Assembly: GCA_013416795.1 (NCBI GenBank)
Contig: RQSC01000757.1
Location: 140,610-204,609, forward strand
Length of the DNA: 64,000 bases
Direction: 5' to 3'
Source of the DNA: Prasinococcaceae sp. CCMP 1430
Lineage: Eukaryota; Plantae; Prasinodermophyta
Shown: one piece after another, positions 42,147 to 61,983 of the stretch
Position numbering within the stretch: the stretch's first letter is position 1
Layout: each line of letters starts with the position of its first letter
Notes under the pieces: model-generated
Databases searched by the model: none
What the model saw: only the letters and a program-made list of their open reading frames with translations
Told to the model about the DNA's origin: nothing
Position numbers and translations under genes: made by a program

Positions 42147-42322
42147 GTGGACGACGCGCTCGGTGCATGTTCTCGTATCATTAGGTGGAATTGTTAATGG
42201 TGGCCGTGCCGACACCTGTCCCCCGACCGCCGCGCGCCGACGCAGCGCTGCGCAGAGGGGGAGCACGTGCCTGCAGCGAGGCGCAAATATTAGATGGGTG
42301 GGCGCGCCCGGAGACGCACAGC

Positions 42323-45300
42323 TTAGTGCTGTGCGGTGAAGAATGCCGGAGCGTGCAGAATCCAGTTGTCAATGTCCGAGGCGGGGCAGGCCACCTCGAG
42401 CTCGCAGAGCGCTGCAGATCGGCCGTAATCAAAGTAGAGCGGCACACGCAGCATGGACGTCGAAGTAGACATGTCAGCGGCGGCATGGCCTCGCGCCACC
42501 CACTCGATGGCGCAAGGCGGAGCGGGCGCCAAGTTCGGCGCGTCCGGAGCGACCTCCACCAGCACACCGCCCTGGATGGCGGCACCCTCAATGCTGAGGC
42601 CCTCGAGCAAGCAGCCGTTGGCAGGCGCCCCGGTCGCGGTGAAGCTCGTCCTCAGTGCGAGGGCCTCGAGCGGCACGCGCAGCCCGCGGGCCGCCTGCTG
42701 CGCCAGCGCCTTGAGGAAGCGCGCCGGGTTGAACAGCTGGCCCAGGTCGAGCGGGCGCGCCAGCAAGGAGCCATCGGTCGCAGCGCGCTGCCAGCCGTCC
42801 AGCGCGCCCGCGAGCCTCGCTGCAGCGCGGCAGTACGCGAGTGGCTCCTTGGGTCCCTCCCAGAGTGTGTCCCAGCTCGCGGGCACGCAGCTGGCGAGCA
42901 ACGCCTCGGCGTCGGCCTTGGTTTCTGCCGTGAGCATGTCACGCCCGCGAAGCACCGCCCCGATGGCCGCCAGCGTCTGATCGATCGCGCGCACCACCTT
43001 TCGGCCGTTTGAGCCCTCGAGCTCAACAAAGGCAGCGATGGGCGACAGCTGAGTGTTGGCACCCCTGCCGCCGGCGCGCTTGAAGCCCTCCCTGAGCTGC
43101 GGCGCACCCGTCATGAGCGACTCCCACTGCCGCATAATGGGCCCTAGGCTCACCGCCCAGCGCTCGCGCGAGAAGCCCGACCCAGCTGTGGACGCCAGCA
43201 ACGACGCCGAGCGCAGCTCCCGCAGGCGCGAGCGCACGCTGTCGGCGTTCGCCTGCACGACGGTGCGTTGGACGTTGGGCGACAGCGAGAAAAGCGCGGG
43301 TGTGTCGGCGTCGGGCATGCTCGCAATGAGTTCCAAGTAGTCCCTGTGATTCGTACTGGTGGGCAACAGCAAGCCCGTGCCCGGCATGGGCCTGCCGGAG
43401 ACCGCCTGCTGGCAGAAGTACCGGCGTAGGTAGGCATTCAACACGCGCACGTCATACGGGTTGTCCACGCGGCCGCCATAGATGGCCTGCGCGAGAAGGC
43501 CGTGCAGGTACTTCCACTTGATGCCGGATGAGTCCCCGCCCTTGCACGCGATCTCGAGGATGTCCGAGGCGCAGCGCAGGTCGGCGAAGGAAAATTCGTA
43601 GAACTTGGTCCAGCCTTGCACACCGTACGTCCGCCGCTCCTGCACGATCGCGTTGAACCACGCCAGGCAGAAGAGCATCTGCGCGCGCGCTACCGAGCCC
43701 TGACCAACAAAAGTGGTGGGCCACGCGTCATACGAGCGCTGCAAGTTCTTCTTGATGCCCGGCGGTGACTCATACGACACCTTGAGCGAGTTGGCGAGCA
43801 GGCCGGCGGGCACACCGTCGTGCTCCTGCGTCGTGCAGAAGAGGCGGAACGACTCGTGCGGCTCCAGCGCGTGGATCTCCTTCTCGAGAATGGGGAGGAA
43901 CGAGAGCGACAGGTGCAGGTTCTTGAGACACAGCCAGTCGCCCTTGGCGGCACATTCGCGCAGCAGTGCCAGCGCCGGCTCCGCCTGGCCCTGGCCCATC
44001 GCAACCTGCCTGAAGCGCTCCAATCCTACCATGCGCCCGGCAAACTCCTCGAGCTCCTGCGATGGGTCACTGCCAGTCGACGTGATGAAGACCACCGGCT
44101 CGCTCGATATGCTCTCCGCGTGAAGCCTGGCCAGGCCGCCGCTCGGCGCAGGCAGCGTGCGGCAACCAAGAGCCTCACACACGTACGCCTCCATCGCCGC
44201 CTGCAGCCTGTCAGGACGAACAGCGTCCACGAGCATGAGCCTCGCAAGCGGACTGGCGCTGCTCCCAGCGACGCCCTGCGGGAAGGAGGCTTCGCACTGC
44301 GGCTGAGCCGCCCACGAGGCCCACTCCTGCCCGGCCTGTGCGCACGCGTGACCAACCTCTGGGAAGGCCGATGCAAGCGCGGCGAACTTGTGCGCCCGCT
44401 CGTTCGGCACCCACGCTGGCGCGCGGCCGTCCGCGCCAGCGCCTCCCTCCATGGCCGCTTGGCCAAGGAAGTGATCCCACGCGGGGTCGGACATACCCTC
44501 CTCAGCGTCCAGCGTGTCGCCGCCGGCCGCCCTGCCAGCGATCGCCTCGGCAGCAATCGCGTGCGCCAGATGCATGCCAAAGGTGAGTCTGTCCGCCTTG
44601 AATAGCGTGCGTACCACGTAGCCGTGCACCAGCGATAACAGCGTGGCCAGCAGCACGCTCATGCGCGCGCCCAAGTCGTTGGCGGGCGCCTCCGACTCGA
44701 GCGCGCGCTCGAAGAGCCGCTGGAATGTCGACTGCGAGAAGCGGTACATATGTGACAGGTGCGAGAGGTCACCGAGCAGGAAGAACAGTGCAGCACCACG
44801 CGACGCGAGAGGCTTGTACACGCTGCGCTGCGCGTCAAGGGTCACCTGCAGCTTGTGCGCCTCCTCGAGGCTCTTCTCGATGGTCACAGCCTTCACCTTG
44901 GTCTCCTCTAGCGAGCTGATGAGCGCGCGATTCTCAAGCAGGTTGCCCTCCGAGGTGGCGAGCGCGTCCAGCAGCGCCTCCTCGAGCGTGACGAGCTCAA
45001 GGCGCAGCTCCTCCTCCTTCTTGAGGAGCTCGCTCTTTTGGCGTTCGAGCTCCGGCTGCTCGTGCGTGATGGCGATACCCAGAAGCTGGCTCTCCACCCC
45101 GCCGCGCGTCACGTTGCAGTTGATCGACGTCACCAAGTGCCGCGCGTCGGGAGGCAAGCTCGGCGCAGGCGATCGCGTCACCAGGAAGAGCCTGAAGTCC
45201 TCGTTGTAGTCGACCAGCTTGTCGCCGACCTGCACGGCGAGCCGCGGGCCCTGGCGGACGAGGTCCTTACGTAGAATGGGGTATAGGATCGGCTCGATGT

Positions 45301-48300
45301 GGTCGGCCTCGCGCACCACAATGGTCTTGCCGAAGCGCACGGCGAGCTCCAGCGCGTTGGTGAAGCGCTCCTCGTGCATCGCCACGCTTTCCACGCTCGA
45401 GCCCGACGAATCGCCCTTGGCGCCCGAGCCGCGCAGGTGCGTTTCAAGCCAGTGCGCGGTGTGGCTCGAGGGGTCCACGATGAGCGGCGGCTGCGTCGAA
45501 TTGAGCACGCAGACGGCGTTGGCCGCGCTCAGAGGGTCTGCCGGCAGGCCCTCGGCCTTCCACAGCAGCATCTCGCTCTCGCTAGACATGAAGCGCGCCA
45601 GGTCGAAGCCTTCCATTCCCATTGCTGACGTCCACTGGCGCGTGTAGTTCGCTCGCATCTCTTCGGCCTGCGGCGCGAGATAAGTGATGGACGCTGCGGC
45701 GAGCATCATCTTCGTCGGCAGGGCAGTGACCTCCTACGAGAGCGAGCGCACCTGTCTCTCCCAGCGGCTCTTCTCGCCGCCGAGCTTTGAGAGCAGCGAC
45801 TGAGCCGCACCCAGCTGCTCGGTGGCGCGCTGCAGGCCGAACTTGAGTTGCTCGGCCTCCATGGTGCGCTGCTGGAAGTCGGCCTTGAGCGCGGCTACGC
45901 GGTCGTCGAGCGTTGCGAGCTCCTCCTCGCACGCGCGCAGACGCACCCTGGACTCATCGAGTGATGCGCTCAAGTGGTCCATCTCGCTCTCGAGCGGCCC
46001 AATTTTGGCCAGGATGTACGAATACTGGACGTTGGCCTTCACCCACGCAGCGAGCGGCGCGGCGGCCACGCTGCTCTTGTAGATGACGGCATGCTCAAAG
46101 GAGTTGCCCTTCTGGCGCAGCAGTTTCTCGACGGCGTCGCGCGCCGCCGGGGTAATGTCGTGCGGGTCGAAGTTGAGGATCTGCTCCTTGACGCCCCGCA
46201 CGCCCAGGAACTTCTTCATGGCGGTCCACGAGGTGTCCGCGCCGCCGAAGAGGCGGATGACTCCTTCGAGCACGTCGCGAATGGGGTCCGGCGGCACCTT
46301 GAGCGAGCGGATCTCTGTCAGGTTTTCGCTCTTGACTTGCCCCACGGCCGCCCTGGCAGCGTCCACCATGGGTTGGATCTCCGCGAGCTCGGAGGCCACC
46401 GCGCCCTTGCGCTGCTTGAGTTCGGTCTCTTCCGTGCCCAGGCGCTGCTGCAGCACGGTGACCTCGTTGCGCGAGTCGCTCGCGCTCTGCATTGCGAGCG
46501 TGATCTGCCCCAGCGCCTGCTCCGCCTGCTCCTGCTTCTCCTCGAGCGCGGCGCGCTGACGCTGTGCCTGAACGCTAAGCTCATCGACTGTCGCCTCGGC
46601 TTCGGCGAGCTTCTGCAGGCCACTCGAAGTGGACGCGCGCTGTTTCAGAAGCGAGGCACGCTTCGCGCTGAACAGCGACGCGTATGTGGCCACGAAGGCT
46701 ACGAACTGGCGCGGCGTGGCACCCTCCAGCCGCTGCGTGTCGTGAATCGCTATCATCTGCGCGACGATGCGCTTGCCATCGTCCTTGTTGCTCTCGGCAA
46801 TCACGGCCTTGAGGAGCTTCGCAGGCACAGCCCCCATCCCCGTCGGCGACCATCCGTTGGTCCACAGCAGCGTGCACCGCGTGAAAAGCGCCGGGTTGCT
46901 GTCGCACCGCAGCGAGTAGCCGTCGGCGGACGGATCCATCGACAGTACGATGCGGAGGTTGGCGCGAACGCGTACGACGAAGAACTCGTACAGCGTACGG
47001 CACTTGAAGCGGAAGCCGTGCTGCGAGAATGCCTCCCTGAGCGGTCCCAGCGAGGTCTCGAGCTCCTCGTTGCTGAAGAGGCCGGGTATCTCCCCGCCGC
47101 TCAGCAAAGAGTTCAAGCACTCAAGGAATGTGGCCTCACCCAGGTTGTGGTCCTCCACGAAGAGCACGCAAGCCTCGCCCTCCACGCCGGCGCGCAGCAT
47201 GGACGCCTTGAGGTCCGCGCGCAGTGCCTTGAGGTCGTAGCCGCGTCCCATCCTGAGCGTGACCATTTCGAGGCGCAGCGCGTACGCCGCCAGCGTGACC
47301 GCCGACCGGCGGCCAACGCCCGAGGGTCCATTGAGCAGAAGGCAGCCGCCCGGGTTGCTGAGCGCGCGTTCAATTCGCGCGATGCGCTGCACCACATCAG
47401 TAAAAAGAAAGATGTTGAGCTGCTTGAACTCGCGCTCGTAGCGCATCAGAAGGTCCTGGACGAGCGGGACGTAGTCAACCACGGGCAGGCGAACCAGCTG
47501 CGGCGCAGTGGGCACGCTGTCGCCGCCGCCGCCACCCACCGGCGGGGGCACGGTGAGCGTCGTAAAGATGGTGTCGCGGGAATCGGGCGCCTGGCCCCAG
47601 TGGGAACGAAGCTGGTCCGTAAGAATGTCCTCGAAGCGCGCCTCGTCCTCGGCACTCACCATCCGGTCGCCGAAGTGCCGCCAGGCGGCGTGTGCAACCG
47701 CCTCGAGCACGGTACCGGCGCCGCCGCCGACCGCGTCGTAGCGACGCAGCGCCTGCGCCCACGCGGTCAGATCGCGCGGCGTTAGCTGGTAGTGGCGGTG
47801 CGTCTCGGCGCTGAAGGCTTCCCGCATGCCCTCGTACACGTCGAGGATGGTGCCCGCGAGTCTTGCGGCAGGCGCGTCGCCCGCCCACTGCGCGTCGTTG
47901 CCGCCGGTCATTTCCTTCAAGATGGGCACGAGCATGCGAGCGTAGACGTCCGTCAGCTGATCGCGGTCGGGGAAGGACATGAAACCGAGCCGAACCACCG
48001 CCGTGAGGCGAGTGGTGAGCGCGTGGCGACCAACGGTGGTCTCCGGGTTCATAGTGCACACGATCTGGATGCGCTCGAGGGTAATGAACTCAAGCGAGTC
48101 GTCGTAATAGCCGTTGTACGTAACCAGCTGCTGCAGGAAGGATGAGAGCTGCGACGTGTCATACTTGTCGGGCTTGGGAAGATTGCACTCGCGCAGATAC
48201 AGAATGAGGCGCTCGCTGTCGCGGGGCCGCAACACCTTGCCCACGGCAGTAGTGGCCGGCGCGCCACACATCTGCGACAGCTTCTGCAGCACGGCGCGGG

Positions 48301-51300
48301 TGTCCGTCTGTGCCGAGCAGAAAATGGTCGCCACGCCCGCGCCGCTCAGCCGCTCGAAGCAGTGGGCAAGCAGCGTCGACTTGCCCGCGCCGTCGGGGCC
48401 CGACAGGATGACCGGCTCGCCGCGCTCCAGCCAGGGCATCACCAGTGCCGCATTTGCACGCATATCGTGGGTCGGCACGAAGACATGTGCGGCATCATCG
48501 TCGCCATCGGCGTCGTCATCCTCATCGCCTTCACGATACGCCTCAGGCGGGCGCAGCAGTTCGTCGGCGAGCACCTCGCCACTCCAGCGCTCCACCTCTG
48601 CGTACAGCTCGTGGCGGGTGTCGAGCGGCAGGTTGGCGCCGAAGCCGCGCGCCACGCCAAGCGCGTAGCCGCGCGGCGTGGCGTCGTCGGGTCCGGTGGG
48701 CAGGCAGCTCAGCGCGTTGGCAATGAGGCCTGCACGCGTGGTGGGCACTGCCGGTGGGTGCGCCTGCGCCCAGTCGAGTGCCCTGTAAAAGAGGTCGGCG
48801 GTCGCACGCTCCGCGACAGGGCGCAGCTCCTCCGGTAGCGTCCCCAGCCACTTTCGCACCAGCAGCTTGGCGTCGAGGGCTTCCTCGCTCAGCACGATCA
48901 TGCCCATGCGGCTCACGGTTGCACGGCTGGCGAACTCGAGCGAGTGCGTCTCGAACAGGAAGTTGACGTTGTGCGCGAACTGGATGCGCTCGCCATTAGG
49001 GACTATTCGAGCTCGCGCCGAGCCAGGCAGCGCGGGTGGCGCCTGTCAGCGCCGTGCACGTGCCATCCATACGATGCGCGGGCGGCGGGGGGAGCTCTCG
49101 GACGCAGAGCGCTCGCGAGGCAGAGAGCGCACACAAAACATCGAGCTGCAAGGGGCGTGGCGTCAGCGCACCGCGCCAGCTGGCACCACGTACGCGTCAT
49201 GAGCTTGTTGTCGTCGAGCACGCTGTTGAGGCTCTCAATCCACACGGGGTCGACATCGCCGTCGATGACGATCCAACTGTGCGTGTCGAGGCTTTCGCGC
49301 ACAACCTGTCTGGCGGCGGCCACCATGACGCCGTCGTGCATCTCGCGAGTGTCCGGGTCCATGTAACCGAGGAGCTGCTCGCGTGGGATGGCCTTGGGAT
49401 TCATGACGTGCAGCTTGGGCGCACCCGCCGGCGTCTTGGCCAGCGCCAGCTCCAGAATGCGCCACAGCGTCGTCTTCCCGCAGCCCGAGGGCCCGACGAC
49501 GACCACGCCGATGCGCTGCGACAACGCGACGTGCAGCTGCATGACCTTCTGCACGTGCGCGTCGACCACCTCCAGCCCCATGTCTGACATCGCCGCGCGG
49601 ATGGCCGCTTCCATGTTGGCGTCGCCCGAGTCGTCCACGCGCACGCCGACGAACACATCGCCCACGAGCGCGTTGAAGCGCGCGACGTCCACGTGGGCGA
49701 GCTTGGGCAGCGTGCACACCCGCAGCGCGCGCACCAGCAGCTGCGACTCGAGCGACTCGTCAATGACGGATCCCCTCTCGCGCTCGGCCTGAAGGAGCAC
49801 CCCGGCGATAGACAGCGCGGTCTTCATGCTGCGTAGGCCCCAGTCGTATTGCACAGCCGCGCTGAGCAGCGCCTTCGAGGTGTCGAAGACCGCGACCAGT
49901 TTGCGCCCGAGCGCGCGCGCGTGCGCGTACCCCTCGCCGAGCAGCATCACCTCCGAGATGAGCTCGTTATTCGGCTTGGACATGGCTACCTGGCGGAAGA
50001 GCGCCTTGAGGTTGTCCGGCAGCTTGGAGCGACCCCCGTAGCCCTTGCCCGCTGGGTTGAGCGTGACGAAGATGCCAGCATTCTTGTTGACGTCCACGGT
50101 CCGCCCCAGGAACTCCATGGTCTCGGCACGCTGCTTGAGCGCGAACTGAATCGTTTGGATCTGCTGAGAGACCGCGCTGAGCACGTCGGGGAGCAGGCGG
50201 TTGAACTCGTCGAAGCAGCCCCACGCGCCGCATTTGGCGAGGCCGACGAAGATGCGCGCCATCGCGTGCATATCGAAGGCCTCATCGCAATTAAAAACCA
50301 GGCACTGTCGGCCGAAGGCCTGCGCCAGCGACTTGACACTCTCTGTCTTGCCGGTGCCTGCGGGCCCGTAGGGGTTGCCGCCCGCGCCCAGGTGCATGGC
50401 GGCCGTCAGCGTCAGATAGCACTTGTCCGTGAGCGGTGTGTACACGAGCTTGGGCGCGTTGCCCTGGTACTCGAACGTGTAGTCGCCGTAGTACTCGCCC
50501 ATGGCGCACGCCGCGCCGCCGCCCTTTGTGGCGTAGTACCGCAGTTGGCGATACCACGTGTAGTCGTCGAGCGAGCGCACGCCAGCGTCGGCCAGCTGAT
50601 CAACCACGTCGATCAGATGGATGACGTCAAGGACGAGCGCTTTGATCTTGAGGTTGAGCACCTTGTGGCCCGTGACATTCAGGCTCGTGTACTCGCGCAG
50701 CTGCTCGCTGAGCTTGCCGTGAAGCTGCTTGAGCGTCCCGCCCCTGATGGCCGCCTCGGCCTCCTGTGTGAAGTGCACGGCGTCAGCGAGGCCTAGCACC
50801 TGGCTAGGGATGGCGTCGTAGTCCTTCTCAGCCAGGCAGCGCTTCAGAAGGCCCTTGAGCGTGCCGACCATCTCCACGGAGAGCGCACCGAGCCACTCCT
50901 CGACGGAATCCGTCACGGCGACAGGCCGAGCGAGCGGCACGACTTCGCCGGCGGCCGACTGCATGCCCACGATGGCCTTGTTCTCTGCGCCGAAGCGCAC
51001 GGTGTGCACGCCCGCAAAGAGCTTTTTGAGGTGGCTCTGGATGACGGTGGGATCCTTGGACTGGCCGAGGATCTGCAGCAGGTCGTCGTCACCGATGAAG
51101 TAGAAGCGGGGAAACATGGAGCGCTTCTGCTCCAAGAAGACGGCCAGGGCCTTCTGGCAGTGTTCGAGCTGCTCCGTCATCCGGGGCAAGATGTGGAGCA
51201 GGCGTGGAAACTCGGAGAACGACACCACCAGCGGGTCGTTCTTCACGGCGCCCATGATGCGGCGGAAGTCGTCGTCGACCTTGCGGAAGCGCGCCTGCTC

Positions 51301-54300
51301 GTTGGGCAGCGCGCCGCGCCCGAAGATCGGCTGCAGGTAGACCCAGCGTCGCTGCACGCCGTTGAGCTGCGCGAGAGCATCGGCGAGCGTCGCCAGGCGC
51401 CGCCCCCACACGTCCGCCTCGTCCTTGAAGGCCGCAAAGAAGGGCGAGTCCTTGAGCGAGCCCAGAAGCGACTGGTTGTCGCCAACCTCGGTGAGAAGCT
51501 CTTTCCACTCCTTGATGAGCACCGTGCGTCGCACGGGCGCCGTGGCGGTCTCGTGCGGCACCACGGCGAATTGGCGCTCGAAGCCCCACACCTGCAGCTG
51601 CTCGAGCGCCTCGCGCAGCACGGTCTCGCCCTGCGCCTGCGCGTGCAGGTGCTTGAGCTGCTCAACATTGGCGAGCAGGCGCTGCGCCTTGCCCACGAAG
51701 GTGCCCAGGGTGAGCTCATCGACCTTGGTGCTCGTGGGCAGGCCGAGCAGGCTGAACATCTGGGCCCAGTGCGTGGGCTGGTAGCCGTCACCGCGCACGT
51801 ACGTGAGCGCCGGCACGGCCTTACGGTAGCCCTCGATTTCGCGCATGAGCATGAGCGCCACGGCGTCCTTGCCCGCCCCGCCGCGGTCCTTGACGCGCGT
51901 CGCCCACCGGGTGAGGAAGTCCTCGAAGTCAAAGAGGCGCGCGCGCACGGAGAACCAGTCCTTGCCCATCTGCTCACGCTTTGCCACGTCGAACTCGCCG
52001 TACACGGACCACGCCTCCTTCGTGGTCTCGATGTCCTCCTTGCACTCAGCGAGCGTCGTGAAGTCGGGCGGGTCGAGATCGAACGCGGCGCAGTTGGACG
52101 ACAGCCGCGCGGCATCCTCGCCGAGATCCACGAGCGCGGCCGCGTAGTCGTCGATCTTGGAGAGCGTCACCGACGCGTCGCCCTCGGGCACGCCCTGCGG
52201 CTTCAGCTGCAGCCAGCGCTCGCGGAAGGACTCGCACCGCAGCGCGAACTCGCGCAGCTCGCGCTCGATCCGCGACTTGAGCTGGTCCTTTTGCTCCTCG
52301 AGCCGCGCGCCATGCTGCTCGAGCTGCTGGAGGAAGCTGTCCCAGTCGTTGCTCAGGCCGCTCAAGTCGACGAGGTGCACGCTGGCCCCCTTGCCGCCGC
52401 CGCCGGCGTAATGGCGCAGCAGCTTGTTCTTTTCCTCGCAGCGGCGCTTGAGCGTGCCCATCGTGGGGATGTTCTGCACGAGCGCCTGCGCCTCGGCGCG
52501 CGCCTCGCCGATCTCCTCGAGGCTGGCGGCGTTCGCCTCGAGCATCTGGCGCCCCTTGCGCATCCACTCGTCGATCTGCTCCTTGTCGGCCTGCGCCTTG
52601 CGGCGCAGCGAGCCCAGGAGCGCTTCGTGGACCCCCTTGATCTGCTCGTCGATGGCCGACTTGACGGGCGCCAGGGAGACCAGGTAGCAGTCCACCTTGA
52701 GGCTCGCGGGCACGCGCTCGCTCGCGCGCTGGCGCTCGCGCAGCGACTTGAAGTTGGCGTCGTACTCCTGCACGGTGTCCACGTGCTCGTCGACGAAGGC
52801 CTCCATGTCTTCGACGGTGCCCAGCGCCACCCAGTCCTGCAGGCGCTTGAGCTCGTCCTGCAGGCGCATGAAGAGCGTCTCCGAGCGCTCGTGCACGCGG
52901 GCGATGGCAGCGCCGTAGCCCTCGGTCATGCGCCGGAAGAAGGTCGCCTCCGAGACGCCCCTGAAGGAGCCGGGGATGCCCAGGAACTGCTTGACGGACT
53001 TGTAGTGCGCCGCGCGCATCTGCTCGAGCGGCGGGTCGAACTGCAGGCGGCGGTGCTTGAAGACCATGCGCACCTCTGTCTGCGGCATGTGCTCGTTGAG
53101 GCACTCGAGGCCCACCTGGTACTGGTACTGCAAGACCTTGAACAGCTGGTAGTCCCAGTGCATGCGCCACTCGCGCGTGTCGTTTGGGTTCAGCCCCATG
53201 CTGCGCTCGATCTTGTCGAAGGACAGGCGCAGGTCCTTGATGCCCTCCTTCCAGCGGTCGCGGGCGCGCACGAGGTCGACCGACATGAGCGCGGCCACCT
53301 TGTCGCGCACGCGCGCGTGGTGCGCGCGCAGGCGGCGGTTCTTCGACGTGAGATTTGAGCAGGCCGCCTGCAGGCGCCCCACGTAGCCCTCGAGCTCGCT
53401 GACGTTGCTCCAGGTGAGCGGGGCGCCCATGGCCGTGCGCCCGTTCTTGATGACTTCCTCGAAGCGCAGCGCGTCCTCGAGCATGAGGCCCTTCTGACAC
53501 TGGAGCATCTCGTGCTGGATGTTGTTGTAGAAGTTGGCGACCTGCTTGAGCACCATCGCGTGGCGGTAGAAGCGCGCGGCGGTTTCCGCCGCCCGCGCGA
53601 GGTCGGGCGGCACGGCGAAGCCCAGCGCGCTCAGCTGGCGCACCTCGCGCAGCAGCGTCACCAGCTGGGGCTTGTAGTGCACCTCTACGTGGCCGTCGAC
53701 CATGTCGAGCGCCATGATCTTGCCGCTCGTCTCCAGCGAGAAGTCCTCGAGCGTCGCCTGCGTGTCCGCCTTCCACTCTTCGAAGTCGCGCTGCGAGCTC
53801 TCGCGCAGCTCGCGCGCGAGATCCTGCGCCATCAGTCCGAAGTCGGTCGGCGCGCGCTCGCCGCCGCCCCCCAGCAGAGCCTCGAAGGTCTGCTCCGCCT
53901 CGGCCACCTTGGCGCGGCACTGCGCGCTCCACGCGAGCCGGGCCACGCTCGCGGGCGCCAGCCGCCGCCCGCCGCCGCCGCCGCCGGCCTGGGCGTCCAT
54001 GTCCGAGCGGATGTTGCTCAGGTGCGACAGCGCGAGCCGCTGCAGCGTCTCCCGCTCCGGCCCGAGCGACGCCGCCACGCCGGGCCGGGCCATGAGCCCG
54101 CCCAGCCGTCGGAGCTCGCGGAAGACCTGCTGCGGCTGGGCGGCCGCCGCCGCGCCCCTGTCGCCGTGGGCGCCGACGGCGGCCGACAGGCTCGGGATGA
54201 CGACGGACGCGAGATGCTCTCGCAGGCGCTCCCCCACGCGCGCCTCGGCGGGCGCCGCGCCCGCCTCGTACTCCGCGCAGGCCGTCGCCCAGGTCGCGTC

Positions 54301-55443
54301 GGACAGTCCGCCCACGCGCAGGGGCTCGCAGTACCCGCTCGCGAAGGGCGCGAACGCATCGTCCAGGCGCAGCACGCGGACGTCCTCGGGCCCCAGCAGG
54401 CGGCGCATCTCGTGGTGGGCGTCGAGCATCTGCAGGATGGCCTCGCAGCGGCCGCCGAAGGCGCCCACCGCGGACACGTCGTACGCGGCGCCCTCCCAGG
54501 GGTGCGCTTTGGTCTGCAGCCAGATGCCCTGCGTGAGGTCGCTGACGGCCCTCTCCCAGCGCGCGCTCAGGCGCATCGCGAAGCGCAGCTCGGAGTCGAC
54601 GCGCGCGCGGTTCGCGCGGGGAGGCCACACGCCGCCGGCGAGCTTGCCGCGCGTGTACGCGGCGAAGGCCTCGCCGACGCAGCCCAGCAGGTGCGCCATG
54701 CGCCGCTGCGGGTACGCCTGCTCGCCGAGCCCCCACAGCGCGTCCAGCGCGTCGCGCGTGGCCTCGAGGAGCTCCAAGACCCCCTCGTGATCGAGCGCGC
54801 CCAGGTCGCCGAACTCCGCCCTGATGGGGTCGAACTCGCGGCACACCTCGCCGGCGGCGTCCCTCACGTGCGGCGCCGAGCGCGCCGAGCCGGCCAGGTC
54901 CTCCCAGAAGGACATCTCGTCGGAGGGCGTGGCGATGCCCGCCAGCGGCGCGGTGGCGGGGTCCGCGCGCTTCGACGAGCCGCCGCCGCGGCGCACGGCC
55001 GCGCCCAGCCCCGCCTCGACCTCGCGCACCAGCGCGCTCAGGTCGCCGTCCGCGGCCGCGCCGGCGGCGCCCTCCCGTTCGGCGTCCGCGCCGCGCTTGC
55101 CGCCGCGCGCGCCCACCAGCGGCGCGTAGACGCTCTTCACGCTGCGGTAGAACGCCGCCAGCAGCTGCGACGACGCGAACGAGCTCACCACCAGCTTGTG
55201 CGGCAGGTCGTTCAGCGAGAGCGCGCCCGGCGTCGCCTTGGAGAGGACGATGTGGTACGCGCCGCTGTCGTCGCCCGCGCTCACGTCGTTGGACAGCGCG
55301 ATCGGCGCGCAGGCGTCGCCCGCGGCGTCGCCCGCGACGGTCGCCCTGAGCGTGGCCACCGCAGGGTCGTCAAGGAAGGCCGCGAGCGCCCCCGAGTCGT
55401 CGGCGCGCACGCGCACCGCCGCGCGCGCCCTCTCCGGCGCGTC
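42323..55443 (-). CDS. DYNC2H1: Cytoplasmic dynein-2 heavy chain (retrograde IFT motor, DHC1b); exons 49194-55443 and 42323-49002; in-frame TAG at 45734-45736; start lost in gap
   Basis: P-loops are GPAGTGKT (AAA1), GPSGCGKT (AAA2), GPDGAGKS (AAA3) and the dynein-2-type GPSGVGRR (AAA4). The stalk, MTBD and AAA5/6 are present. The intron at 49003-49193 restores DDNKLMT|LPNGERIQF. The total is ~4300 codons. Confidence 0.95.
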
Positions 55444-55491
55444 NNNNNNNNNNNNNNNNNNNNNNNNNNNNNNNNNNNNNNNNNNNNNNNN
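55444..55491. other. Assembly gap (48 N)
   Basis: Run of N; the sequence beyond it does not continue the dynein frame. Confidence 1.
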
Positions 55492-56191
55492 GCGCGATGT
55501 GGCACTTCGGAAGCATCAAGGACAACAGCGCAGGCATCGCTGAATTCTTTGACAAGCGGTGGTGACTGGCGGCGGCTGCAGCAGACGACTGTTCGGGGGA
55601 AAACGGGCGGGGGGCGGGACAGGCCGTCATCTCAGCACGGACGGACAGTGCGACGTCTGCGCCGGCCGGCTGGTGCGCCGCTCGGTGCACCACACATCTG
55701 GTGCCCCTCCATCGCTCGCCTGCCCATTCTGCCGTGGCGATCTGGAAATCGGGCGACACATGTTCGCTTTTCTCGCGAGAGAAAACGCGAGAGAAAACGC
55801 GCGAGAGCGCGTGCGCGCGCCCGCCACAGCGCGCGCGGGCCGCGGCAATTGCGCTGCCACCCGCCGTGCGCGAGCGCCGCGTGTGGCGCACGCGCGCACG
55901 ACAACCCCCAGCGACCACCCACCCACCCACACAAGCACGTGCACGCACACGCTCGCCTCGCAGCGCGTCGAGCGCGCGCGCCGGCCGCCAGCCGCCAGCC
56001 GCCGGCCGCGAAGTTTTCTACGGAAGTTAATTTAGACACGTCTTAATTCCGCGAAGTCTGCACCATGGGTTATGATATATAATCTGTTTGCGGCCTGGCA
56101 GGGGTGAATTCGCGGGCGGGAAACTTCAACGCAGCCCGCGGCGGCTGGCGCGCGGCTGGCGGGCTGCGTGTCTCACGCGAGTGCGTGCGTG

Positions 56192-56192
<1 letters not shown>

Positions 56193-56244
<52 letters not shown>

Positions 56245-56257
56245 GCGCGCGCGCGCG

Positions 56258-56312
<55 letters not shown>
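56193..56312. repeat. Two (CA)n microsatellites separated by (CG)n
   Basis: (CA)n at ~56193-56242 and ~56259-56312 with a ccgcgcgcgcgcgcgc spacer. Confidence 0.95.
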
Positions 56313-56320
<8 letters not shown>

Positions 56321-56348
56321 GGTGAGGGAGGGGCGGCCGCGCGCGCGG

Positions 56349-56443
56349 GAGTGCCAGCCGCCTTGCCGGTGGACGCGTCCCACACGCGCGCCGTCCCGTC
56401 GAAGCTCGCCGACGCCAGGCGCAAGCCGTCGAGTGCCAGCCGC
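56349..56443 (-). pseudogene. 69-nt WD40-coding fragment flanked by 13-bp direct repeats
   Basis: GAGTGCCAGCCGC occurs at 56349-56361 and 56431-56443. The 69 nt between them encode [23 protein letters not shown] on the - strand. Confidence 0.75.
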
Positions 56444-57005
56444 GCGCAATTTGGCGCCCGCCCCCGCCCCCCTCCCCGCTTTTCCCTTTGCCGCAGCGCC
56501 CTCGCCGCTGCGGCGATCGAGGGCGGCGCGAAAAAAACTCTGCGCAGCAATCCCGGACATGGCGTTTTTGCGGCGAGGGTTTTTTGTGCGTGTGCATTCT
56601 GACGTGACGGCGGCATGCTCCCTCAGGCAAATCCGGATAAAAATCAACATCCCCGGTTAACAACGGGAAGCGCCCGCGCAGCGGCCATCGATCGCATGAA
56701 GCACAGAATTTTTCCGACCAAATTTAGATGTTTGAACTGAACTGAAGCGAATGTGTTTGTAAGTTGATGTGACACAACGAAATTGTCCGGCGATCGCCGC
56801 GCGGCGCCCCGCCCCCTTTGCGAGGGAAACAGACCCTTGCAGCTTCCGATGTGCCGCCGCACGCGCCCAACGCAGGGATCGCCGATAAAGTTGCCCTCCC
56901 GTGCCCTCCCCCGACTTGTGGAGGGCGAGGGGGCAGCGCGTGGGGGAAGCGCGGGGCGGGACAAGCGGCGCCACTACGCGCGCGGCGGGCGGCCCAAGAC
57001 CGGCG

Positions 57006-57125
57006 ATGGACTCCGCGCGCATCAGGTACGTGCTCGAGGGTCACAGCCATCGAGTGACCACAGTGTGCTGGAGCCCGGACGGCTTGCGCCTGGCGTCCGC
57101 CAGCACCGACACGCCGGTGCGCGTT
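57006..57125 (+). pseudogene. Truncated WD40 repeat ORF interrupted by a tandem repeat array
   Basis: [40 protein letters not shown] runs directly into the satellite array. Confidence 0.7.
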
Positions 57126-57824
57126 GCGAGCGGCGCCCACGAGCATCGCCGAGTCGACCGCCCTCGCGTTCCCTCCCCCCGCTTTTGGCGGCGCGGATGG
57201 GTCGCCACGGGCCGTGAGAGCGCTGGTAACGCGCCGGCCGCGTCCGAGGCGCGGTCCATCGCGCACCATTGGGGCGCCGAAGCGCACGCGCTCTCGATGG
57301 CGATTTCATATAAAAATGCATGCGAGCGGCGCCCACGAGCATCGCCGAGTCGACCGCCCTCGCGAGGGCGCCGAAGCGCACGCGCTCTCGATGGCGAATT
57401 TAGATAAAAATGCATGCGAGCGGCGCCCATGAGCATCGCCGAGTCGACCGCCCTCGCGTTCCCTCCCCTCGCTTTTGGCGGCGCGGATGGGTCGCCACGG
57501 GCCGTGAGAGCGCTGGTAACGCGCCGGCCGCGTCCGAGGCGCGGTCCATCGCGCACCATAAGCGCACGCGCTCTCGATGGCGATTTCATATAAAAATGCA
57601 TGCGAGCGGCGCCCACGAGCATCGCCGAGTCGACCGCCCTCGCGTTCCCTCCCCTCGCTTTTGGCGGCGCGGATGGGTCGCCACGGGCCGTGAGAGCGCT
57701 GGTAACGCGCCGGCCGCGTCCGAGGCGCGGTCCATCGCGCACCATTGGGGCGCCGAAGCGCACGCGCTCTCGATGGCGATTTCATATTAAAATGCATGCG
57801 AGCGGCGCCCACGAGCATCGCCGA
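57126..57824. repeat. ~196-bp tandem repeat array (units of 196, 94, 186, 196 bp and a partial unit)
   Basis: Units begin GCGAGCGGCGCCCA at 57126, 57322, 57416, 57602 and 57798. The complete units end in an AT-rich tail, for example ...TTTCATATAAAAATGCAT. Confidence 0.92.
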
Positions 57825-58063
57825 TGAGGGCAAAAGCGATGTCCGGCCGAGTGGACACGCAGAGGTACTGCAGTGCCCCGACGACCCTTTAATATCCCAT
57901 GGGTACATTGAGCGCCGCCGGCCGCGCAGAAATGACCCTCAGAACGATCCATCCGGTCGCTCGCGCCACCGCGGCGCGTCGTAATAACGGCGGGATCGGG
58001 GGGGACGGGGGCGGCATCGCGCGCGGGCGGGCGGGCGATTCCCGATGCGTTTTGATGGGGGTG

Positions 58064-58128
58064 NNNNNNNNNNNNNNNNNNNNNNNNNNNNNNNNNNNNN
58101 NNNNNNNNNNNNNNNNNNNNNNNNNNNN
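58064..58128. other. Assembly gap (65 N)
   Basis: Run of N. Confidence 1.
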
Positions 58129-59646
58129 GCGGAGGTCCAGCAGCGCGCCTCCGACATTATACTCATCTCAATGCTCGCGGGTGCGGCGCAGGCGCTGGCG
58201 GGCATGCTGCGGCTCGGCATCGTCGTGAACGCGGTGTCGCTGCCCGTGCTCGCCGGGTTCGTGTTCGGCGCGACGGTCACAATCGCCACGTCGCAGCTGA
58301 GCAAGCTCCTAGGATACAGCGGCGTGCACGTGCGGCGGCCCTTCCTGCAGAACGTGTGGGACACCGCTAGCAACCTCAAGAGCACCGAACCTGCAGCGCT
58401 GGCGCTCGGGCTGGCGTGCATCGCGCTCATCCTCGCGATGAAGCACTGGAAGTCGGTGCGACCGCAATCGAGGCTCGCGGCTGCCATGGGCACGTCGCGC
58501 AACGTCGTGGCCGTCGCGCTGGGCATCGGCGTGTGCGCGCTCTTGGTCGCTCTGGGACACGACGTGCTGCCGCGCGTAGGCGACATGCCGGACGGCCTCC
58601 CTGCGCCGCGCCTCCCCGAGCTCAGCTGGGAGCGGGCGCGGCGTCTCGCGCTGCCAGCGGCGTCGGTGGCGCTCATTGGCTTCGTCGAGGACGTCGCCAT
58701 TGCCAAGAGCTTTGCCCGCAAGGGCCGATACTCGATCGACCCGAGCCAGGAACTGGTGGCGCTCGGGGCGTGCAACGTGCTTGGCGGCATTTTCCACGCC
58801 ATGCCCGTCACTGGCAGCTTCAGCCGCACGGCGGTGAACCATGCGAGCGGCTGCACGTCACCGCTCGCGGGCATCGCGACCTCGGTGACCGTCTTGGTTG
58901 CGATATTCGCGCTGCAGCGGGTGTTTGCGTTCATCCCGCTGTCGGCACTCGCGGCGATCATCATCAGCGCGGTTTTCACCATGGTCGACCTGCACGAGCT
59001 GCGCGGCCTCTGGAAGGCGTCCAAGCCGGAGTTTCTCTTCGTGTTCCTGCCAACATGCGCTGCTGGCTTCGCGTTCGGCCTCCAGTATGCGATCTTTGCA
59101 GGCATTGTGTGCGCCGTGCCTGTCTACATGGCCACAGCGGGCGTGCCCAATGTGCGTCGAGCAACGGCGCAGCAGGCGGCGCGCTGCGGCGAAGGGGTCG
59201 CACTCCTGCAGCTGGCTGGCGCGGTAGCGTTTCCCTCGAGTGCGAAGCTCGAGGCGGAGGCGGAGGCACTGCGCGACAACGGGGTCACCCACGTTGTCAT
59301 GGACCTCTCCGCGGCGCCAAGAGTTGACTTCTCTGCGGCGGTGGCCGTCCATGACCTCGCCGACTCGTTGATCCAGAGGGGGGGCATGCTTTACGTGGCA
59401 GCAGCGGACAAAAGCGTGCTGAGGATGCTACGAGCAATAGGGAGGCCAGGAGGGGAGCCCGAATACTGCGAGGCCGGCGTCGAGAGCGCGCTCGAACGCG
59501 CCGCGGCGGACATGTCGGCTGCGGTGACAGACGGCGCAGAGGGCGCCAGCGATGCGCGCGGGGCAGCCCATTCGCACGCGCAAAGCGGGGAGCGGCGCCG
59601 CAGAGCCGCCAGCAAGGACGAAACCTCACCACTCTTGCAGGTCTAG
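58129..59646 (+). CDS. SulP/SLC26 sulfate transporter, 5'-truncated duplicate copy (truncation at gap)
   Basis: Essentially identical to 60466-61983 (offset 2337 bp); I found one synonymous ATT/ATC difference. Confidence 0.75.
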   Translation, partial: AEVQQRASDIILISMLAGAAQALAGMLRLGIVVNAVSLPVLAGFVFGATVTIATSQLSKLLGYSGVHVRRPFLQNVWDTASNLKSTEPAALALGLACIALILAMKHWKSVRPQSRLAAAMGTSRNVVAVALGIGVCALLVALGHDVLPRVGDMPDGLPAPRLPELSWERARRLALPAASVALIGFVEDVAIAKSFARKGRYSIDPSQELVALGACNVLGGIFHAMPVTGSFSRTAVNHASGCTSPLAGIATSVTVLVAIFALQRVFAFIPLSALAAIIISAVFTMVDLHELRGLWKASKPEFLFVFLPTCAAGFAFGLQYAIFAGIVCAVPVYMATAGVPNVRRATAQQAARCGEGVALLQLAGAVAFPSSAKLEAEAEALRDNGVTHVVMDLSAAPRVDFSAAVAVHDLADSLIQRGGMLYVAAADKSVLRMLRAIGRPGGEPEYCEAGVESALERAAADMSAAVTDGAEGASDARGAAHSHAQSGERRRRAASKDETSPLLQV

Positions 59647-60138
59647 CTGGGCCTACCTGCACATACTAATAATACGACGCCGCCGGCCACACCCGCGGCT
59701 GCGCGCCACTTTCGAACTCCACCTCTCCCCCATCGAACGTAACGGGGCCGCGGGGGCGCCCCGTGCCTTTTTTTGTATCAAAACGCACGCGTTTATGGGG
59801 AGATTACAAACCCTGTATTCGCGTTTCGGACGTGCATTTCGAGCTGGCGTAACCTCAATGAGGCATCGCGAGGTTGCGGTTTGTTTGAATTGGAATTGGG
59901 AGTCGGGTCGCGGGTCAATAATGCGCGAGTGCGCGCGTCAATTTCCGATGCGGGGCGCGCGCGAGGTGCGTCTTTGTGTGTAAACTGCGGAAAGGGCGTT
60001 TCGAAATCGAATCCGGGACTGGACAGCGTTCCCCGGGCGCGCGCGGGCGCGCGCGCGGGCGGCTGGGCGCGCGGAGCGCGCGCGCGCCACCCTGGCCCTC
60101 GCTCGCAGGCGCGGCCTCGCCGCCGCGACGCGGGCGAC

Positions 60139-61983
60139 ATGATCATCTACAGCAAGCAGCTCTCCGGGATGGCCTCGATGGGCGCATGGGCGCGAGGCTG
60201 CGTCCCGCCTCTCGGCTGGCTGCCGCGGTACGCGTGGCGCGAGCGCGCGGCGCGCGACGCGGGTGCGGGCGCGATGGTTGGCGCGGTCGTCGTGCCGCAG
60301 GCGCTGGCGTACGCCAGCCTGGCGGGGCTGCCCGAGCAGTACGGGTTGTACGCCGCCTACCTCGCGCCGGCCGTTTATGCGCTGCTCGGCACGTCCAATG
60401 AGATCACCGTGGGGCCTACGGCCATCATGTCCATCATGGTAGGCGAGTTGGGCACCGGAAGCGGCGCGGAGGTCCAGCAGCGCGCCTCCGACATTATACT
60501 CATCTCAATGCTCGCGGGTGCGGCGCAGGCGCTGGCGGGCATGCTGCGGCTCGGCATCGTCGTGAACGCGGTGTCGCTGCCCGTGCTCGCCGGGTTCGTG
60601 TTCGGCGCGACGGTCACAATCGCCACGTCGCAGCTGAGCAAGCTCCTAGGATACAGCGGCGTGCACGTGCGGCGGCCCTTCCTGCAGAACGTGTGGGACA
60701 CCGCTAGCAACCTCAAGAGCACCGAACCTGCAGCGCTGGCGCTCGGGCTGGCGTGCATCGCGCTCATCCTCGCGATGAAGCACTGGAAGTCGGTGCGACC
60801 GCAATCGAGGCTCGCGGCTGCCATGGGCACGTCGCGCAACGTCGTGGCCGTCGCGCTGGGCATCGGCGTGTGCGCGCTCTTGGTCGCTCTGGGACACGAC
60901 GTGCTGCCGCGCGTAGGCGACATGCCGGACGGCCTCCCTGCGCCGCGCCTCCCCGAGCTCAGCTGGGAGCGGGCGCGGCGTCTCGCGCTGCCAGCGGCGT
61001 CGGTGGCGCTCATTGGCTTCGTCGAGGACGTCGCCATCGCCAAGAGCTTTGCCCGCAAGGGCCGATACTCGATCGACCCGAGCCAGGAACTGGTGGCGCT
61101 CGGGGCGTGCAACGTGCTTGGCGGCATTTTCCACGCCATGCCCGTCACTGGCAGCTTCAGCCGCACGGCGGTGAACCATGCGAGCGGCTGCACGTCACCG
61201 CTCGCGGGCATCGCGACCTCGGTGACCGTCTTGGTTGCGATATTCGCGCTGCAGCGGGTGTTTGCGTTCATCCCGCTGTCGGCACTCGCGGCGATCATCA
61301 TCAGCGCGGTTTTCACCATGGTCGACCTGCACGAGCTGCGCGGCCTCTGGAAGGCGTCCAAGCCGGAGTTTCTCTTCGTGTTCCTGCCAACATGCGCTGC
61401 TGGCTTCGCGTTCGGCCTCCAGTATGCGATCTTTGCAGGCATTGTGTGCGCCGTGCCTGTCTACATGGCCACAGCGGGCGTGCCCAATGTGCGTCGAGCA
61501 ACGGCGCAGCAGGCGGCGCGCTGCGGCGAAGGGGTCGCACTCCTGCAGCTGGCTGGCGCGGTAGCGTTTCCCTCGAGTGCGAAGCTCGAGGCGGAGGCGG
61601 AGGCACTGCGCGACAACGGGGTCACCCACGTTGTCATGGACCTCTCCGCGGCGCCAAGAGTTGACTTCTCTGCGGCGGTGGCCGTCCATGACCTCGCCGA
61701 CTCGTTGATCCAGAGGGGGGGCATGCTTTACGTGGCAGCAGCGGACAAAAGCGTGCTGAGGATGCTACGAGCAATAGGGAGGCCAGGAGGGGAGCCCGAA
61801 TACTGCGAGGCCGGCGTCGAGAGCGCGCTCGAACGCGCCGCGGCGGACATGTCGGCTGCGGTGACAGACGGCGCAGAGGGCGCCAGCGATGCGCGCGGGG
61901 CAGCCCATTCGCACGCGCAAAGCGGGGAGCGGCGCCGCAGAGCCGCCAGCAAGGACGAAACCTCACCACTCTTGCAGGTCTAG
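60139..61983 (+). CDS. SULTR: SulP/SLC26 sulfate (anion) transporter with STAS domain, ~614 aa, single exon
   Basis: WLPRY...DAGAGAMVGAVVVPQALAYASLAGLPEQYGLY...GTSNEITVGPTAIMS, QELVALG..N, TGSFSRTAVN and the STAS motif VVMDLSAAPRVDFSA. Confidence 0.95.
   Translation: MIIYSKQLSGMASMGAWARGCVPPLGWLPRYAWRERAARDAGAGAMVGAVVVPQALAYASLAGLPEQYGLYAAYLAPAVYALLGTSNEITVGPTAIMSIMVGELGTGSGAEVQQRASDIILISMLAGAAQALAGMLRLGIVVNAVSLPVLAGFVFGATVTIATSQLSKLLGYSGVHVRRPFLQNVWDTASNLKSTEPAALALGLACIALILAMKHWKSVRPQSRLAAAMGTSRNVVAVALGIGVCALLVALGHDVLPRVGDMPDGLPAPRLPELSWERARRLALPAASVALIGFVEDVAIAKSFARKGRYSIDPSQELVALGACNVLGGIFHAMPVTGSFSRTAVNHASGCTSPLAGIATSVTVLVAIFALQRVFAFIPLSALAAIIISAVFTMVDLHELRGLWKASKPEFLFVFLPTCAAGFAFGLQYAIFAGIVCAVPVYMATAGVPNVRRATAQQAARCGEGVALLQLAGAVAFPSSAKLEAEAEALRDNGVTHVVMDLSAAPRVDFSAAVAVHDLADSLIQRGGMLYVAAADKSVLRMLRAIGRPGGEPEYCEAGVESALERAAADMSAAVTDGAEGASDARGAAHSHAQSGERRRRAASKDETSPLLQV

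What the first reader, a model, noticed from the sequence alone, without database searches (positions are those of the whole stretch)
45734..45736. Single in-frame TAG in an otherwise intact dynein-2 heavy chain
Seen in the sequence: ...GTG CGC TCG CTC TCG TAG GAG GTC ACT GCC CTG CCG ACG AAG ATG... on the - strand. The 1060-aa and 1128-aa ORFs share a frame and are separated only by this TAG plus 8 sense codons, and I find no usable splice solution. From my recollection of DYNC2H1 (RWNAQVVEITEELATLP), the position is normally Glu, so this would be a single GAG>TAG change. Stopping here removes the end of the stalk, AAA5, AAA6 and the C-terminus, which would kill retrograde IFT. Inference: it is a base-call error, a very recent loss of flagellar function in a coccoid or non-motile strain, or conditional readthrough or editing tied to a cryptic flagellate stage. 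TAG ends several other genes here (FIG4, HutX-like, SulP), which argues against genome-wide TAG reassignment.
Basis: partly seen in the sequence, partly recalled or inferred. Interest (0 to 1): 0.75.

Follow-up and report, generated by a model that had tools for sequence, protein, structure and literature searches.

The report
Real nonsense mutation in algal dynein-2
The sequenced culture strain of the marine green alga Prasinoderma coloniale carries a genuine, recent GAG-to-TAG mutation that cuts off the last quarter of its flagellum-building dynein-2 motor, whereas every wild ocean copy of the gene is intact.

Summary
One TAG sits on the minus strand at 45734-45736, inside a dynein-2 (DHC1b/DYNC2H1) heavy-chain gene. 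It fills exactly one codon position when aligned with human dynein-2.

It is not an assembly or base-call error. An independent, spliced, polyadenylated 12.6-kb transcript contig (JGI sample 3300016765) differs from the window at one base and carries the same TAG. So no splice or edit removes the codon in the assembled mRNA.

The wild state is GAG (Glu). This holds in 8 environmental genomic contigs (Tara Oceans, ENA, Logan; 99.1-99.5% identical), in 12 distinct wild protein haplotypes, and in a sister species at 82% identity.

The 1136 codons after the stop show no further lesion and no relaxed constraint. dN/dS is 0.12-0.14 downstream against 0.19-0.24 upstream, so the mutation is young.

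Nothing supports readthrough. The context is UAG-G, the downstream RNA is not unusually structured, and the stop is not conserved.

Best reading: a strain-specific null allele of the retrograde IFT motor, arisen in culture or as a rare natural variant. The species in the wild keeps the gene under selection.

"Otherwise intact" cannot be checked at the 5' end, because a 48-N gap cuts the gene there.

The scan noted this same stretch twice before (s1-381934, s1-396516), without follow-up.

The parts
45734..45736 (-). Premature TAG codon (wild state GAG, Glu) in coiled-coil 2 at the base of the dynein stalk
   Evidence: Searches show the TAG. It is also present in transcript L002 at 9078-9080. 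All 8 wild contigs have G where the window has T at 45736.
49194..55443 (-). Upstream coding exon (tail, linker, AAA1, AAA2), cut at its 5' side by an assembly gap; start codon not resolved
   Evidence: Pfam finds DHC_N1, DHC_N2, AAA_6 and AAA_5. Transcript L002 1-5811 equals window 55004-49194 at 100%. Walker A motifs lie at codons 1684 and 1975.
49003..49193 (-). 191-nt GT-AG spliceosomal intron
   Evidence: It is absent from transcript L002 and present in the window and in all wild genomic contigs. The join restores ...KLMT-L-PNGERI....
45737..49002 (-). Coding part of the last exon before the stop: AAA3, AAA4, stalk CC1, microtubule-binding domain, most of CC2
   Evidence: Pfam finds DYNC2H1_AAA_dom, AAA_7, DYN_lid, AAA_8 and MT positions 5-301 of 344. 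The best PDB match is 4rh7/6rla dynein-2, E 3e-72.
42323..45733 (-). 1136 sense codons plus the normal TAA stop, now untranslated: end of CC2, AAA5, AAA6, C-terminal domain
   Evidence: Pfam finds AAA_9, Dynein_heavy, AAA_lid_11 and Dynein_C. The PDB match to 6rla has E 1e-96. There is no further stop or frameshift. dN/dS against wild alleles is 0.12-0.14.
42175..42322 (-). 3' UTR up to the poly(A) site
   Evidence: Transcript L002 aligns down to 42175 and then ends in a run of A.
55444..55491 (.). 48-N assembly gap that removes the 5' end of the gene from the window
   Evidence: Wild contig L003 holds 393 nt (62-454) here that the window lacks.

Best explanation
The TAG is a real, strain-specific nonsense mutation (GAG Glu to TAG, a G-to-T change on the coding strand). 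It lies in the single dynein-2 heavy-chain gene noted so far in Prasinoderma coloniale, in the cultured strain that gave both this assembly and the MMETSP-type transcriptome. Translation should stop at about 74% of the coding length. The product keeps the tail, linker, AAA1-AAA4 and most of the stalk. It lacks the base of the stalk, AAA5, AAA6 and the C-terminal domain, so the AAA ring cannot close and the protein is a dead motor (inferred from dynein architecture). The mRNA is still made, spliced and polyadenylated. The mutation is young: the downstream third is undamaged and still shows purifying selection. Wild ocean populations and a sister species keep the full reading frame. So the species maintains retrograde IFT, which fits a cryptic flagellate stage, while this strain has probably lost it. 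Whether the mutation arose during culture or was a rare natural variant in the original isolate cannot be told here.
For: (1) The TAG is in the genome window. It is also in an independent RNA-derived contig that lacks the intron, ends in poly(A) and differs from the window at 1 base of 12,639.
(2) All 8 wild genomic contigs have G at 45736, with the flanking 45 nt invariant on each side. All 12 distinct wild protein haplotypes read SLSEEVTALP. The sister species (82% identical) has GAG.
(3) The spliced wild coding sequences have no internal stop.
(4) dN/dS between window and wild is 0.19-0.24 upstream and 0.12-0.14 downstream; between two wild alleles it is 0.23 and 0.12. Fixed differences give N:S of 9:17 upstream and 2:6 downstream, Fisher p = 1.
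(5) Under neutrality, 9-18 nonsynonymous changes would be expected downstream on the private branch; 2 are seen. This bounds the stop to the last ~0.23-0.63 of that branch, depending on the share of differences assigned to it.
(6) The private missense changes fall at variable sites, except I2964V upstream of the stop.
(7) 73% of all single-base routes to a stop in this GC3-rich (89%) coding sequence give TAG.
(8) Organism: cluster member UniRef A0A7R9T9M9 is named Prasinoderma coloniale. It is 1090/1092 identical to the downstream ORF and includes the private M3578 and L3735.
(9) Li et al. 2020 (PMC7455551) report a homozygous genome by k-mer analysis and no observed flagella.
Against: No read-level data could be inspected, so a minority wild-type allele (heterozygosity or a mixed culture) is not excluded. 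No protein data exist. Basal readthrough of a UAG could yield traces of full-length protein, and the site tolerates many residues among homologues. The identity of JGI sample 3300016765 as strain CCMP1413 is inferred, not read from metadata. The 5' end of the gene is missing from the window, so other lesions there cannot be excluded. Wild contigs are consensus assemblies and would hide a rare TAG allele in nature.
Confidence: 0.85

Rival explanations
1. The strain is diploid or mixed, and the TAG is one allele. An intact GAG allele, collapsed out of both assemblies, still supplies functional dynein-2.
For: Ploidy of the vegetative cell is not known to me. Genome and transcript differ at one 3'-UTR base, 42186, which could be a heterozygous site.
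Against: Li et al. 2020 report homozygosity by k-mer analysis. The transcript matches the window at 12,638 of 12,639 aligned bases, whereas wild alleles differ by 0.5-0.9%, so only one haplotype shows up in the RNA contig. No product matching the TAG allele was found on any contig other than the culture transcript.
Confidence: 0.07
2. The UAG is read through (leaky termination, near-cognate or suppressor tRNA), so that useful amounts of full-length dynein-2 are still made. This might also explain why other genes of this genome carry single in-frame TAGs.
For: The frame after the stop is perfectly open for 1136 codons. The site accepts many residues among 119 homologues. Earlier notes list further single in-frame stops in this genome.
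Against: The stop is not conserved: all conspecific wild alleles and the sister species have GAG. The context is UCG-UAG-GAG, with G at +4. To my knowledge that is a good termination context, unlike the known UAG-CARYYA or UGA-CUAG readthrough motifs. The 100 nt downstream fold no better than shuffles, z = +1.28. The open frame is explained by the youth of the mutation. TAG is the expected stop type from single mutations (73%). TAG ends other ORFs in the window.
Confidence: 0.04
3. The TAG is a base-call, polishing or assembly error and the strain really has GAG.
For: The window comes from a gapped scaffold assembly with three N runs and a probable false duplication nearby.
Against: An independent RNA-derived contig (spliced, poly(A)) has the same TAG. 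The same error in DNA and RNA data sets is very unlikely.
Confidence: 0.02
4. The codon is removed from the message by an 18-nt micro-intron (GTGCGC...TCGTAG), or changed by RNA editing.
For: GT and AG dinucleotides happen to bracket an in-frame 18-nt stretch that ends with the TAG.
Against: The assembled mRNA keeps all 18 nt and the TAG, while the true 191-nt intron is removed. Removal would delete 6 residues that align without a gap to human dynein-2 and to 119 homologues. Wild alleles carry the same 18 nt with GAG, and there it must be coding.
Confidence: 0.01
5. The two halves are made as separate polypeptides (the second from the ATG 8 codons after the stop) and assemble into a split dynein, as in basidiomycete fungi.
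For: An ATG-ATG pair follows the stop by 8 codons. Split dynein-1 heavy chains exist in Basidiomycota (PMC4540427). A shorter transcript-derived protein covering only the downstream part is in UniRef.
Against: Reinitiation after a reading frame of roughly 9.5 kb is not expected in eukaryotes (established knowledge). No wild allele is split. The shorter UniRef entry starts inside the ORF with mismatches at the contig end, as a fragmentary assembly would.
Confidence: 0.01

Closest known systems
Cytoplasmic dynein-2 heavy chain (human DYNC2H1, PDB 4RH7 and 6RLA; Chlamydomonas DHC1b)
   Same: Same domain order and the best-scoring solved relatives (E 3e-72 and 1e-96, against 4e-34 and 3e-41 for dynein-1). 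The Pfam dynein-2-specific AAA domain is present. Wild alleles encode about 4300 residues.
   Different: In this strain the frame is cut at about 74% of its length. From my own knowledge, Chlamydomonas dhc1b null mutants (Pazour 1999, Porter 1999) make short stumpy flagella filled with IFT material, and truncating DYNC2H1 alleles cause human short-rib thoracic dysplasia. No phenotype has been observed here.
Erosion of flagellar dynein genes in the Emiliania huxleyi reference strain CCMP1516 (von Dassow et al. 2015, PMC4438323)
   Same: A genome reference strain of a marine alga has lost intact dynein heavy-chain genes, while other strains of the species keep them. The loss concerns a rarely seen flagellate life stage.
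   Different: In Emiliania all DHC loci are old pseudogenes with large deletions, and the loss is common in open-ocean populations. Here there is one point mutation in one gene, with no decay, and the ocean populations sampled are all intact.
Coccoid versus flagellate strains of Pseudoscourfieldia marina (PMC13213038)
   Same: A coccoid prasinophyte culture strain keeps the full flagellar gene set with about 99% identity to a flagellate strain. This parallels the intact wild P. coloniale alleles.
   Different: That paper's text mentions no premature stop, nonsense change or pseudogene in flagellar genes. Here the retrograde motor is broken in the cultured strain.
Other real nonsense alleles in this same genome (scan note s1-539157, LRR receptor genes)
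   Same: Single premature stops in otherwise good genes whose relatives are uninterrupted. This suggests a general load of recent loss-of-function mutations in this strain.
   Different: Those genes have nothing to do with flagella. I did not re-test that note.

Membership tests
Cytoplasmic dynein-2 heavy chain (DYNC2H1/DHC1b) | Tail (DHC_N1), linker (DHC_N2), six AAA+ modules, stalk with microtubule-binding domain and C-terminal domain, in that order | tested here: met
   Pfam hits across the three pieces, in order.
Cytoplasmic dynein-2 heavy chain (DYNC2H1/DHC1b) | Closer to dynein-2 than to dynein-1 or axonemal dyneins | tested here: met
   The top PDB hits are 4rh7 and 6rla dynein-2, by 38 to 55 orders of magnitude over dynein-1. 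PF21264 DYNC2H1_AAA_dom matches. Named homologues are 'cytoplasmic dynein 2 heavy chain 1' or 'dynein 1b'. No tree was built.
Cytoplasmic dynein-2 heavy chain (DYNC2H1/DHC1b) | Walker A motifs in AAA1-AAA3 | tested here: met
   GPAGTGKT, GPSGCGKT and GPDGAGKS at codons 1684, 1975 and 2276.
Cytoplasmic dynein-2 heavy chain (DYNC2H1/DHC1b) | One uninterrupted reading frame through AAA6 and the C-terminal domain | tested here: not met
   The TAG is at codon 3164 of 4300 in the window and in the transcript. The feature is met in all wild alleles.
Programmed stop-codon readthrough | The stop codon is conserved among relatives, with coding continuing after it | tested here: not met
   12 wild haplotypes and the sister species have Glu/GAG.
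Programmed stop-codon readthrough | Readthrough-promoting 3' context or a downstream RNA structure | tested here: not met
   The context is UAG-GAGGUC. The 100-nt downstream fold has z = +1.28.
Programmed stop-codon readthrough | An extended protein is detected | not testable with these tools
   No proteome data were available.
Spliceosomal intron covering the stop | The stretch is absent from mature mRNA | tested here: not met
   Transcript L002 keeps the codon and its flanks while lacking the true 191-nt intron.
Stop-codon reassignment (TAG as sense) | TAG is not used as a terminator, and in-frame TAGs sit at conserved sense positions in many genes | tested here: not met
   TAG ends the SulP ORF and other long ORFs in the window. 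Conspecific alleles use GAG here. Only this window was examined.
Recent nonsense allele (young unitary pseudogene) | A single-base difference from intact conspecific alleles, confirmed in independent data | tested here: met
   G>T at 45736 is private to the strain. It is present in both DNA and RNA contigs.
Recent nonsense allele (young unitary pseudogene) | Relaxed constraint or secondary lesions downstream of the stop (expected only if the stop is old) | tested here: not met
   Downstream dN/dS is 0.12-0.14, with no extra stop or frameshift. This dates the mutation as young and does not argue against it.

The most novel reading that the evidence does not exclude
The reference strain of the proposed third phylum of green plants lost its retrograde IFT motor through a mutation fixed during decades of clonal culture, while wild Prasinoderma coloniale keeps a working flagellar programme. 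The never-seen flagellate (perhaps gametic) stage would then be discoverable only in fresh isolates. The published inference that the sequenced strain 'can produce flagellate cells' would hold for the species but not for the strain. A rarer variant of this reading is that several in-frame TAGs in this genome are tolerated through leaky UAG decoding.
Probability: 0.3. Interest if true: 0.55.

Novelty: new member of a known kind. Interest (0 to 1): 0.33.

Why it matters
Prasinoderma coloniale CCMP1413 is the genome reference for the Prasinodermophyta. Its flagellar gene set has been used to argue that this non-flagellate alga can still make flagellate cells (PMC7455551). This analysis makes two practical points. 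First, the strain behind this assembly and the public transcriptome carries a null allele of the one motor needed for retrograde intraflagellar transport. Attempts to induce flagella or gametes in this strain may therefore fail or give stumpy flagella. Second, the gene is intact and under purifying selection in many ocean haplotypes and in a sister species. That is independent population-level support for a hidden flagellate stage in nature. It also warns that gene counts taken from a long-cultured strain can include freshly broken genes. The mechanism itself, a point nonsense mutation, is ordinary.

Tried and rejected
All searches were then done on the pieces apart. The spliced coding sequence was assembled only inside local scripts for codon counting; the stop was left in place, or written as X in one local alignment.
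- An exact-pattern scan of metagenome contigs for the site with any base at the first codon position found nothing. That collection does not even hold the JGI transcript, so the blank says nothing.
- The supplements of Li et al. 2020 that are held as text contain no DHC1b or dynein entry. How that study annotated this gene could not be checked.
- No tRNA genes lie in the window, so nothing can be said about suppressor tRNAs.
- The 18-nt GT...AG micro-intron idea was rejected on transcript and alignment evidence.
- Code reassignment was rejected.
- A split two-polypeptide dynein was considered and is judged very unlikely.
- I did not use the large representative protein search, structure prediction or fold search. 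The family was already clear, and these would not bear on the question.

Full report
**Observation**

The minus strand reads ...CGC TCG CTC TCG TAG GAG GTC ACT..., with the TAG at 45736..45734. The flanking ORFs 45734..48916 and 42323..45709 share a frame. They are separated by the TAG and eight sense codons.

Pfam places the following domains:
- DHC_N1, DHC_N2, AAA_6 and AAA_5 in the 2137-aa ORF 49003..55416.
- DYNC2H1_AAA_dom, AAA_7, DYN_lid, AAA_8 and MT (profile positions 5-301 of 344) in the 1060-aa ORF.
- AAA_9, Dynein_heavy, AAA_lid_11 and Dynein_C in the 1136 codons after the stop.

The best solved relatives of both flanks are human dynein-2 (4rh7, 6rla), far ahead of dynein-1. Upstream residue 297 pairs with chain position 3397 and downstream residue 1 with 3402. 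The TAG therefore takes exactly one residue position, with no insertion or deletion. Among 119 dynein-2 homologues the position is always occupied, but it is variable (E 20, A 13, G 12, and others).

**Gene structure**

The gene is not intronless. A transcript contig (below) and the protein alignment define a 191-nt GT-AG intron at 49003-49193, which restores ...LDDNKLMT-L-PNGERI.... The normal stop is TAA at 42323-42325, and the poly(A) site is at about 42175. Walker A motifs of AAA1-AAA3 are present.

The 5' end is not resolved, because a run of 48 N at 55444-55491 interrupts the gene.

**Is the TAG real?**

An exact look-up of the 1128-aa downstream ORF found one public contig: JGI sample 3300016765, Ga0186520_100009, 12,649 nt. 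It aligns to the window in two blocks, 55004-49194 at 100% and 49002-42175 with a single mismatch in the 3' UTR. It lacks the 191-nt intron and ends in a run of A. It is therefore RNA-derived, and it carries the TAG at the same place.

This excludes a genome base-call or polishing error. It also shows that the assembled mRNA neither splices out nor edits the codon.

The same cluster holds UniRef A0A7R9T9M9, named Prasinoderma coloniale. It is 1090/1092 identical to the downstream ORF and includes the strain-private residues. This supports the organism name that earlier scan notes had suggested.

**What do relatives have?**

A word search used the 3025-residue product encoded upstream of the stop on the transcript contig (taken by reference), with its last 426 residues as the scored region. 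It found a 2192-aa protein at 99% identity and a 4309-aa protein at 82% identity, followed by green-algal and other dynein-2 heavy chains. Both read ...RSLSEEVTALP... or ...RALSEDVVALP..., that is, Glu at the TAG position.

The 99% cluster has 27 members. The 12 listed that span the site are distinct haplotypes from ENA, Tara and Logan assemblies, and all have Glu.

I fetched 8 such genomic contigs (L003-L010). They are 99.1-99.5% identical to the window over up to 13.9 kb and keep the intron. All have G where the window has T at 45736, with the 45 nt on either side invariant. Their spliced coding sequences contain no internal stop, and their indels are multiples of three. The sister-species contig L011 has GAG as well.

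**Age and selection**

- 35 nucleotide positions separate the window from all wild contigs.
- Counted per codon, N:S is 9:17 before the stop and 2:6 after it (Fisher p = 1).
- Nei-Gojobori dN/dS between window and wild is 0.19-0.24 upstream and 0.12-0.14 downstream. Between two wild alleles it is 0.23 and 0.12.
- Synonymous divergence between window and wild (1.1-2.2%) is of the same size as between wild alleles, so the strain's haplotype is an ordinary member of the species' diversity.
- If the downstream part had drifted neutrally along the whole private branch, 9-18 nonsynonymous changes would be expected; 2 are seen. The rough 95% upper bound for the fraction of the branch spent with the stop is about 0.23-0.27 if 90-100% of the fixed synonymous differences lie on the window branch, and 0.63 if only half do.
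- The private missense changes lie at variable positions, apart from a conservative I2964V upstream of the stop.

The nonsense mutation is thus a single, young lesion.

**Alternatives**

- *Readthrough.* The stop is not conserved. The context is UCG-UAG-GAG with G at +4. The next 100 nt fold no better than shuffled sequence (z = +1.28).
- *Stop type.* That the stop is TAG needs no special explanation. With 89% GC at third positions, 73% of all single-base routes to a stop in this coding sequence give TAG.
- *Code reassignment.* TAG ends the SulP ORF and other long ORFs of the window.
- *Micro-intron.* An 18-nt GT...AG stretch ends at the TAG, but it is retained in the mRNA. Its removal would also delete six residues that align without a gap to all homologues.
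- *Heterozygosity.* This cannot be excluded without reads. However, Li et al. 2020 report a homozygous genome, and only one haplotype appears in the RNA contig.
- *Split dynein.* A two-polypeptide dynein, as in basidiomycetes (PMC4540427), would need translation of the second ORF, for which there is no evidence.

**Meaning**

Li et al. 2020 state that P. coloniale has not been seen with flagella. They infer from 50 core flagellar proteins, 12 IFT proteins and 6 DHC proteins that it can produce flagellate cells.

Here the retrograde IFT motor is intact and constrained in every wild haplotype sampled and in a sister species, which supports that inference for the species. It is truncated in the cultured strain, so the inference probably does not hold for that strain.

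Loss of the base of the stalk, AAA5, AAA6 and the C-terminal domain should give a dead motor. This is inferred from dynein architecture and, from my own knowledge, from Chlamydomonas dhc1b nulls.

The nearest precedent is the Emiliania huxleyi reference strain CCMP1516, whose dynein heavy-chain genes are all pseudogenes while other strains keep them (PMC4438323). There the decay is old and widespread in the ocean; here it is one fresh point mutation.

Earlier scan notes report other real nonsense alleles and in-frame TAGs in unrelated genes of this genome. I did not re-test them. They fit a general load of recent loss-of-function mutations rather than a targeted loss of flagella.

Whether the change arose in culture or in nature is open.

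**Limits**

- No reads, proteome or strain metadata could be examined.
- The JGI sample's strain identity is inferred from near-identity and from the UniRef name.
- Wild contigs are consensus sequences.
- The first exon is missing from the window.

Noticed in passing
window 55444-55491, with L003:62-454: A 48-N gap cuts off the 5' end of the dynein-2 gene. Wild contig L003 has 393 nt here that the window lacks. In L003 the gene's frame is open from position 323, but there is no in-frame ATG up to 782. The true start (perhaps a further 5' exon) is therefore unresolved in both.
   Followed up: partly
window 58129-59677 versus 60466-62014; N run 58064-58128: A 1549-bp copy of the 3' two-thirds of the SulP gene (99.94% identical, 1 mismatch) sits directly after an N run. 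In wild contig L003 the SulP upstream region (59736-59678) lies only about 390 nt from the dynein-2 5' region. The 4.2-kb block 55492-59677 is therefore either a scaffolding or false-duplication artefact, or a very recent segmental duplication or insertion in this strain.
   Followed up: partly
window 57125-57824: Tandem or nested direct repeats of roughly 190-265 nt (94-99% identical) lie inside the island 55492-58063, which is bounded by N runs.
   Followed up: no
L011:364-13293 versus window 49003-49193: The sister species (82% protein identity) encodes the whole 4309-residue heavy chain as one open frame, without the 191-nt intron that all P. coloniale genomic contigs share. This is an intron gain or loss between close lineages, unless L011 is RNA-derived.
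   Followed up: no
window 42249-55443 (35 strain-private sites): By my count from the lists, 21 of the 35 strain-private substitutions are G/C to A/T. They include two tandem double changes: CC>TT at 44023/44022 and GC>CT at 53226/53225. This AT-biased spectrum is typical of fresh mutations in a GC-rich genome.
   Followed up: partly
window 42186: This is the only genome-versus-transcript mismatch (A in the genome, C in the transcript). It lies 11 nt before the poly(A) site and could be a heterozygous site, a read-end error or a sub-line difference.
   Followed up: no
window 21477-21905: A third, longer N run of 429 bases. The window comes from a gapped scaffold assembly, not a gapless chromosome assembly.
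   Followed up: no
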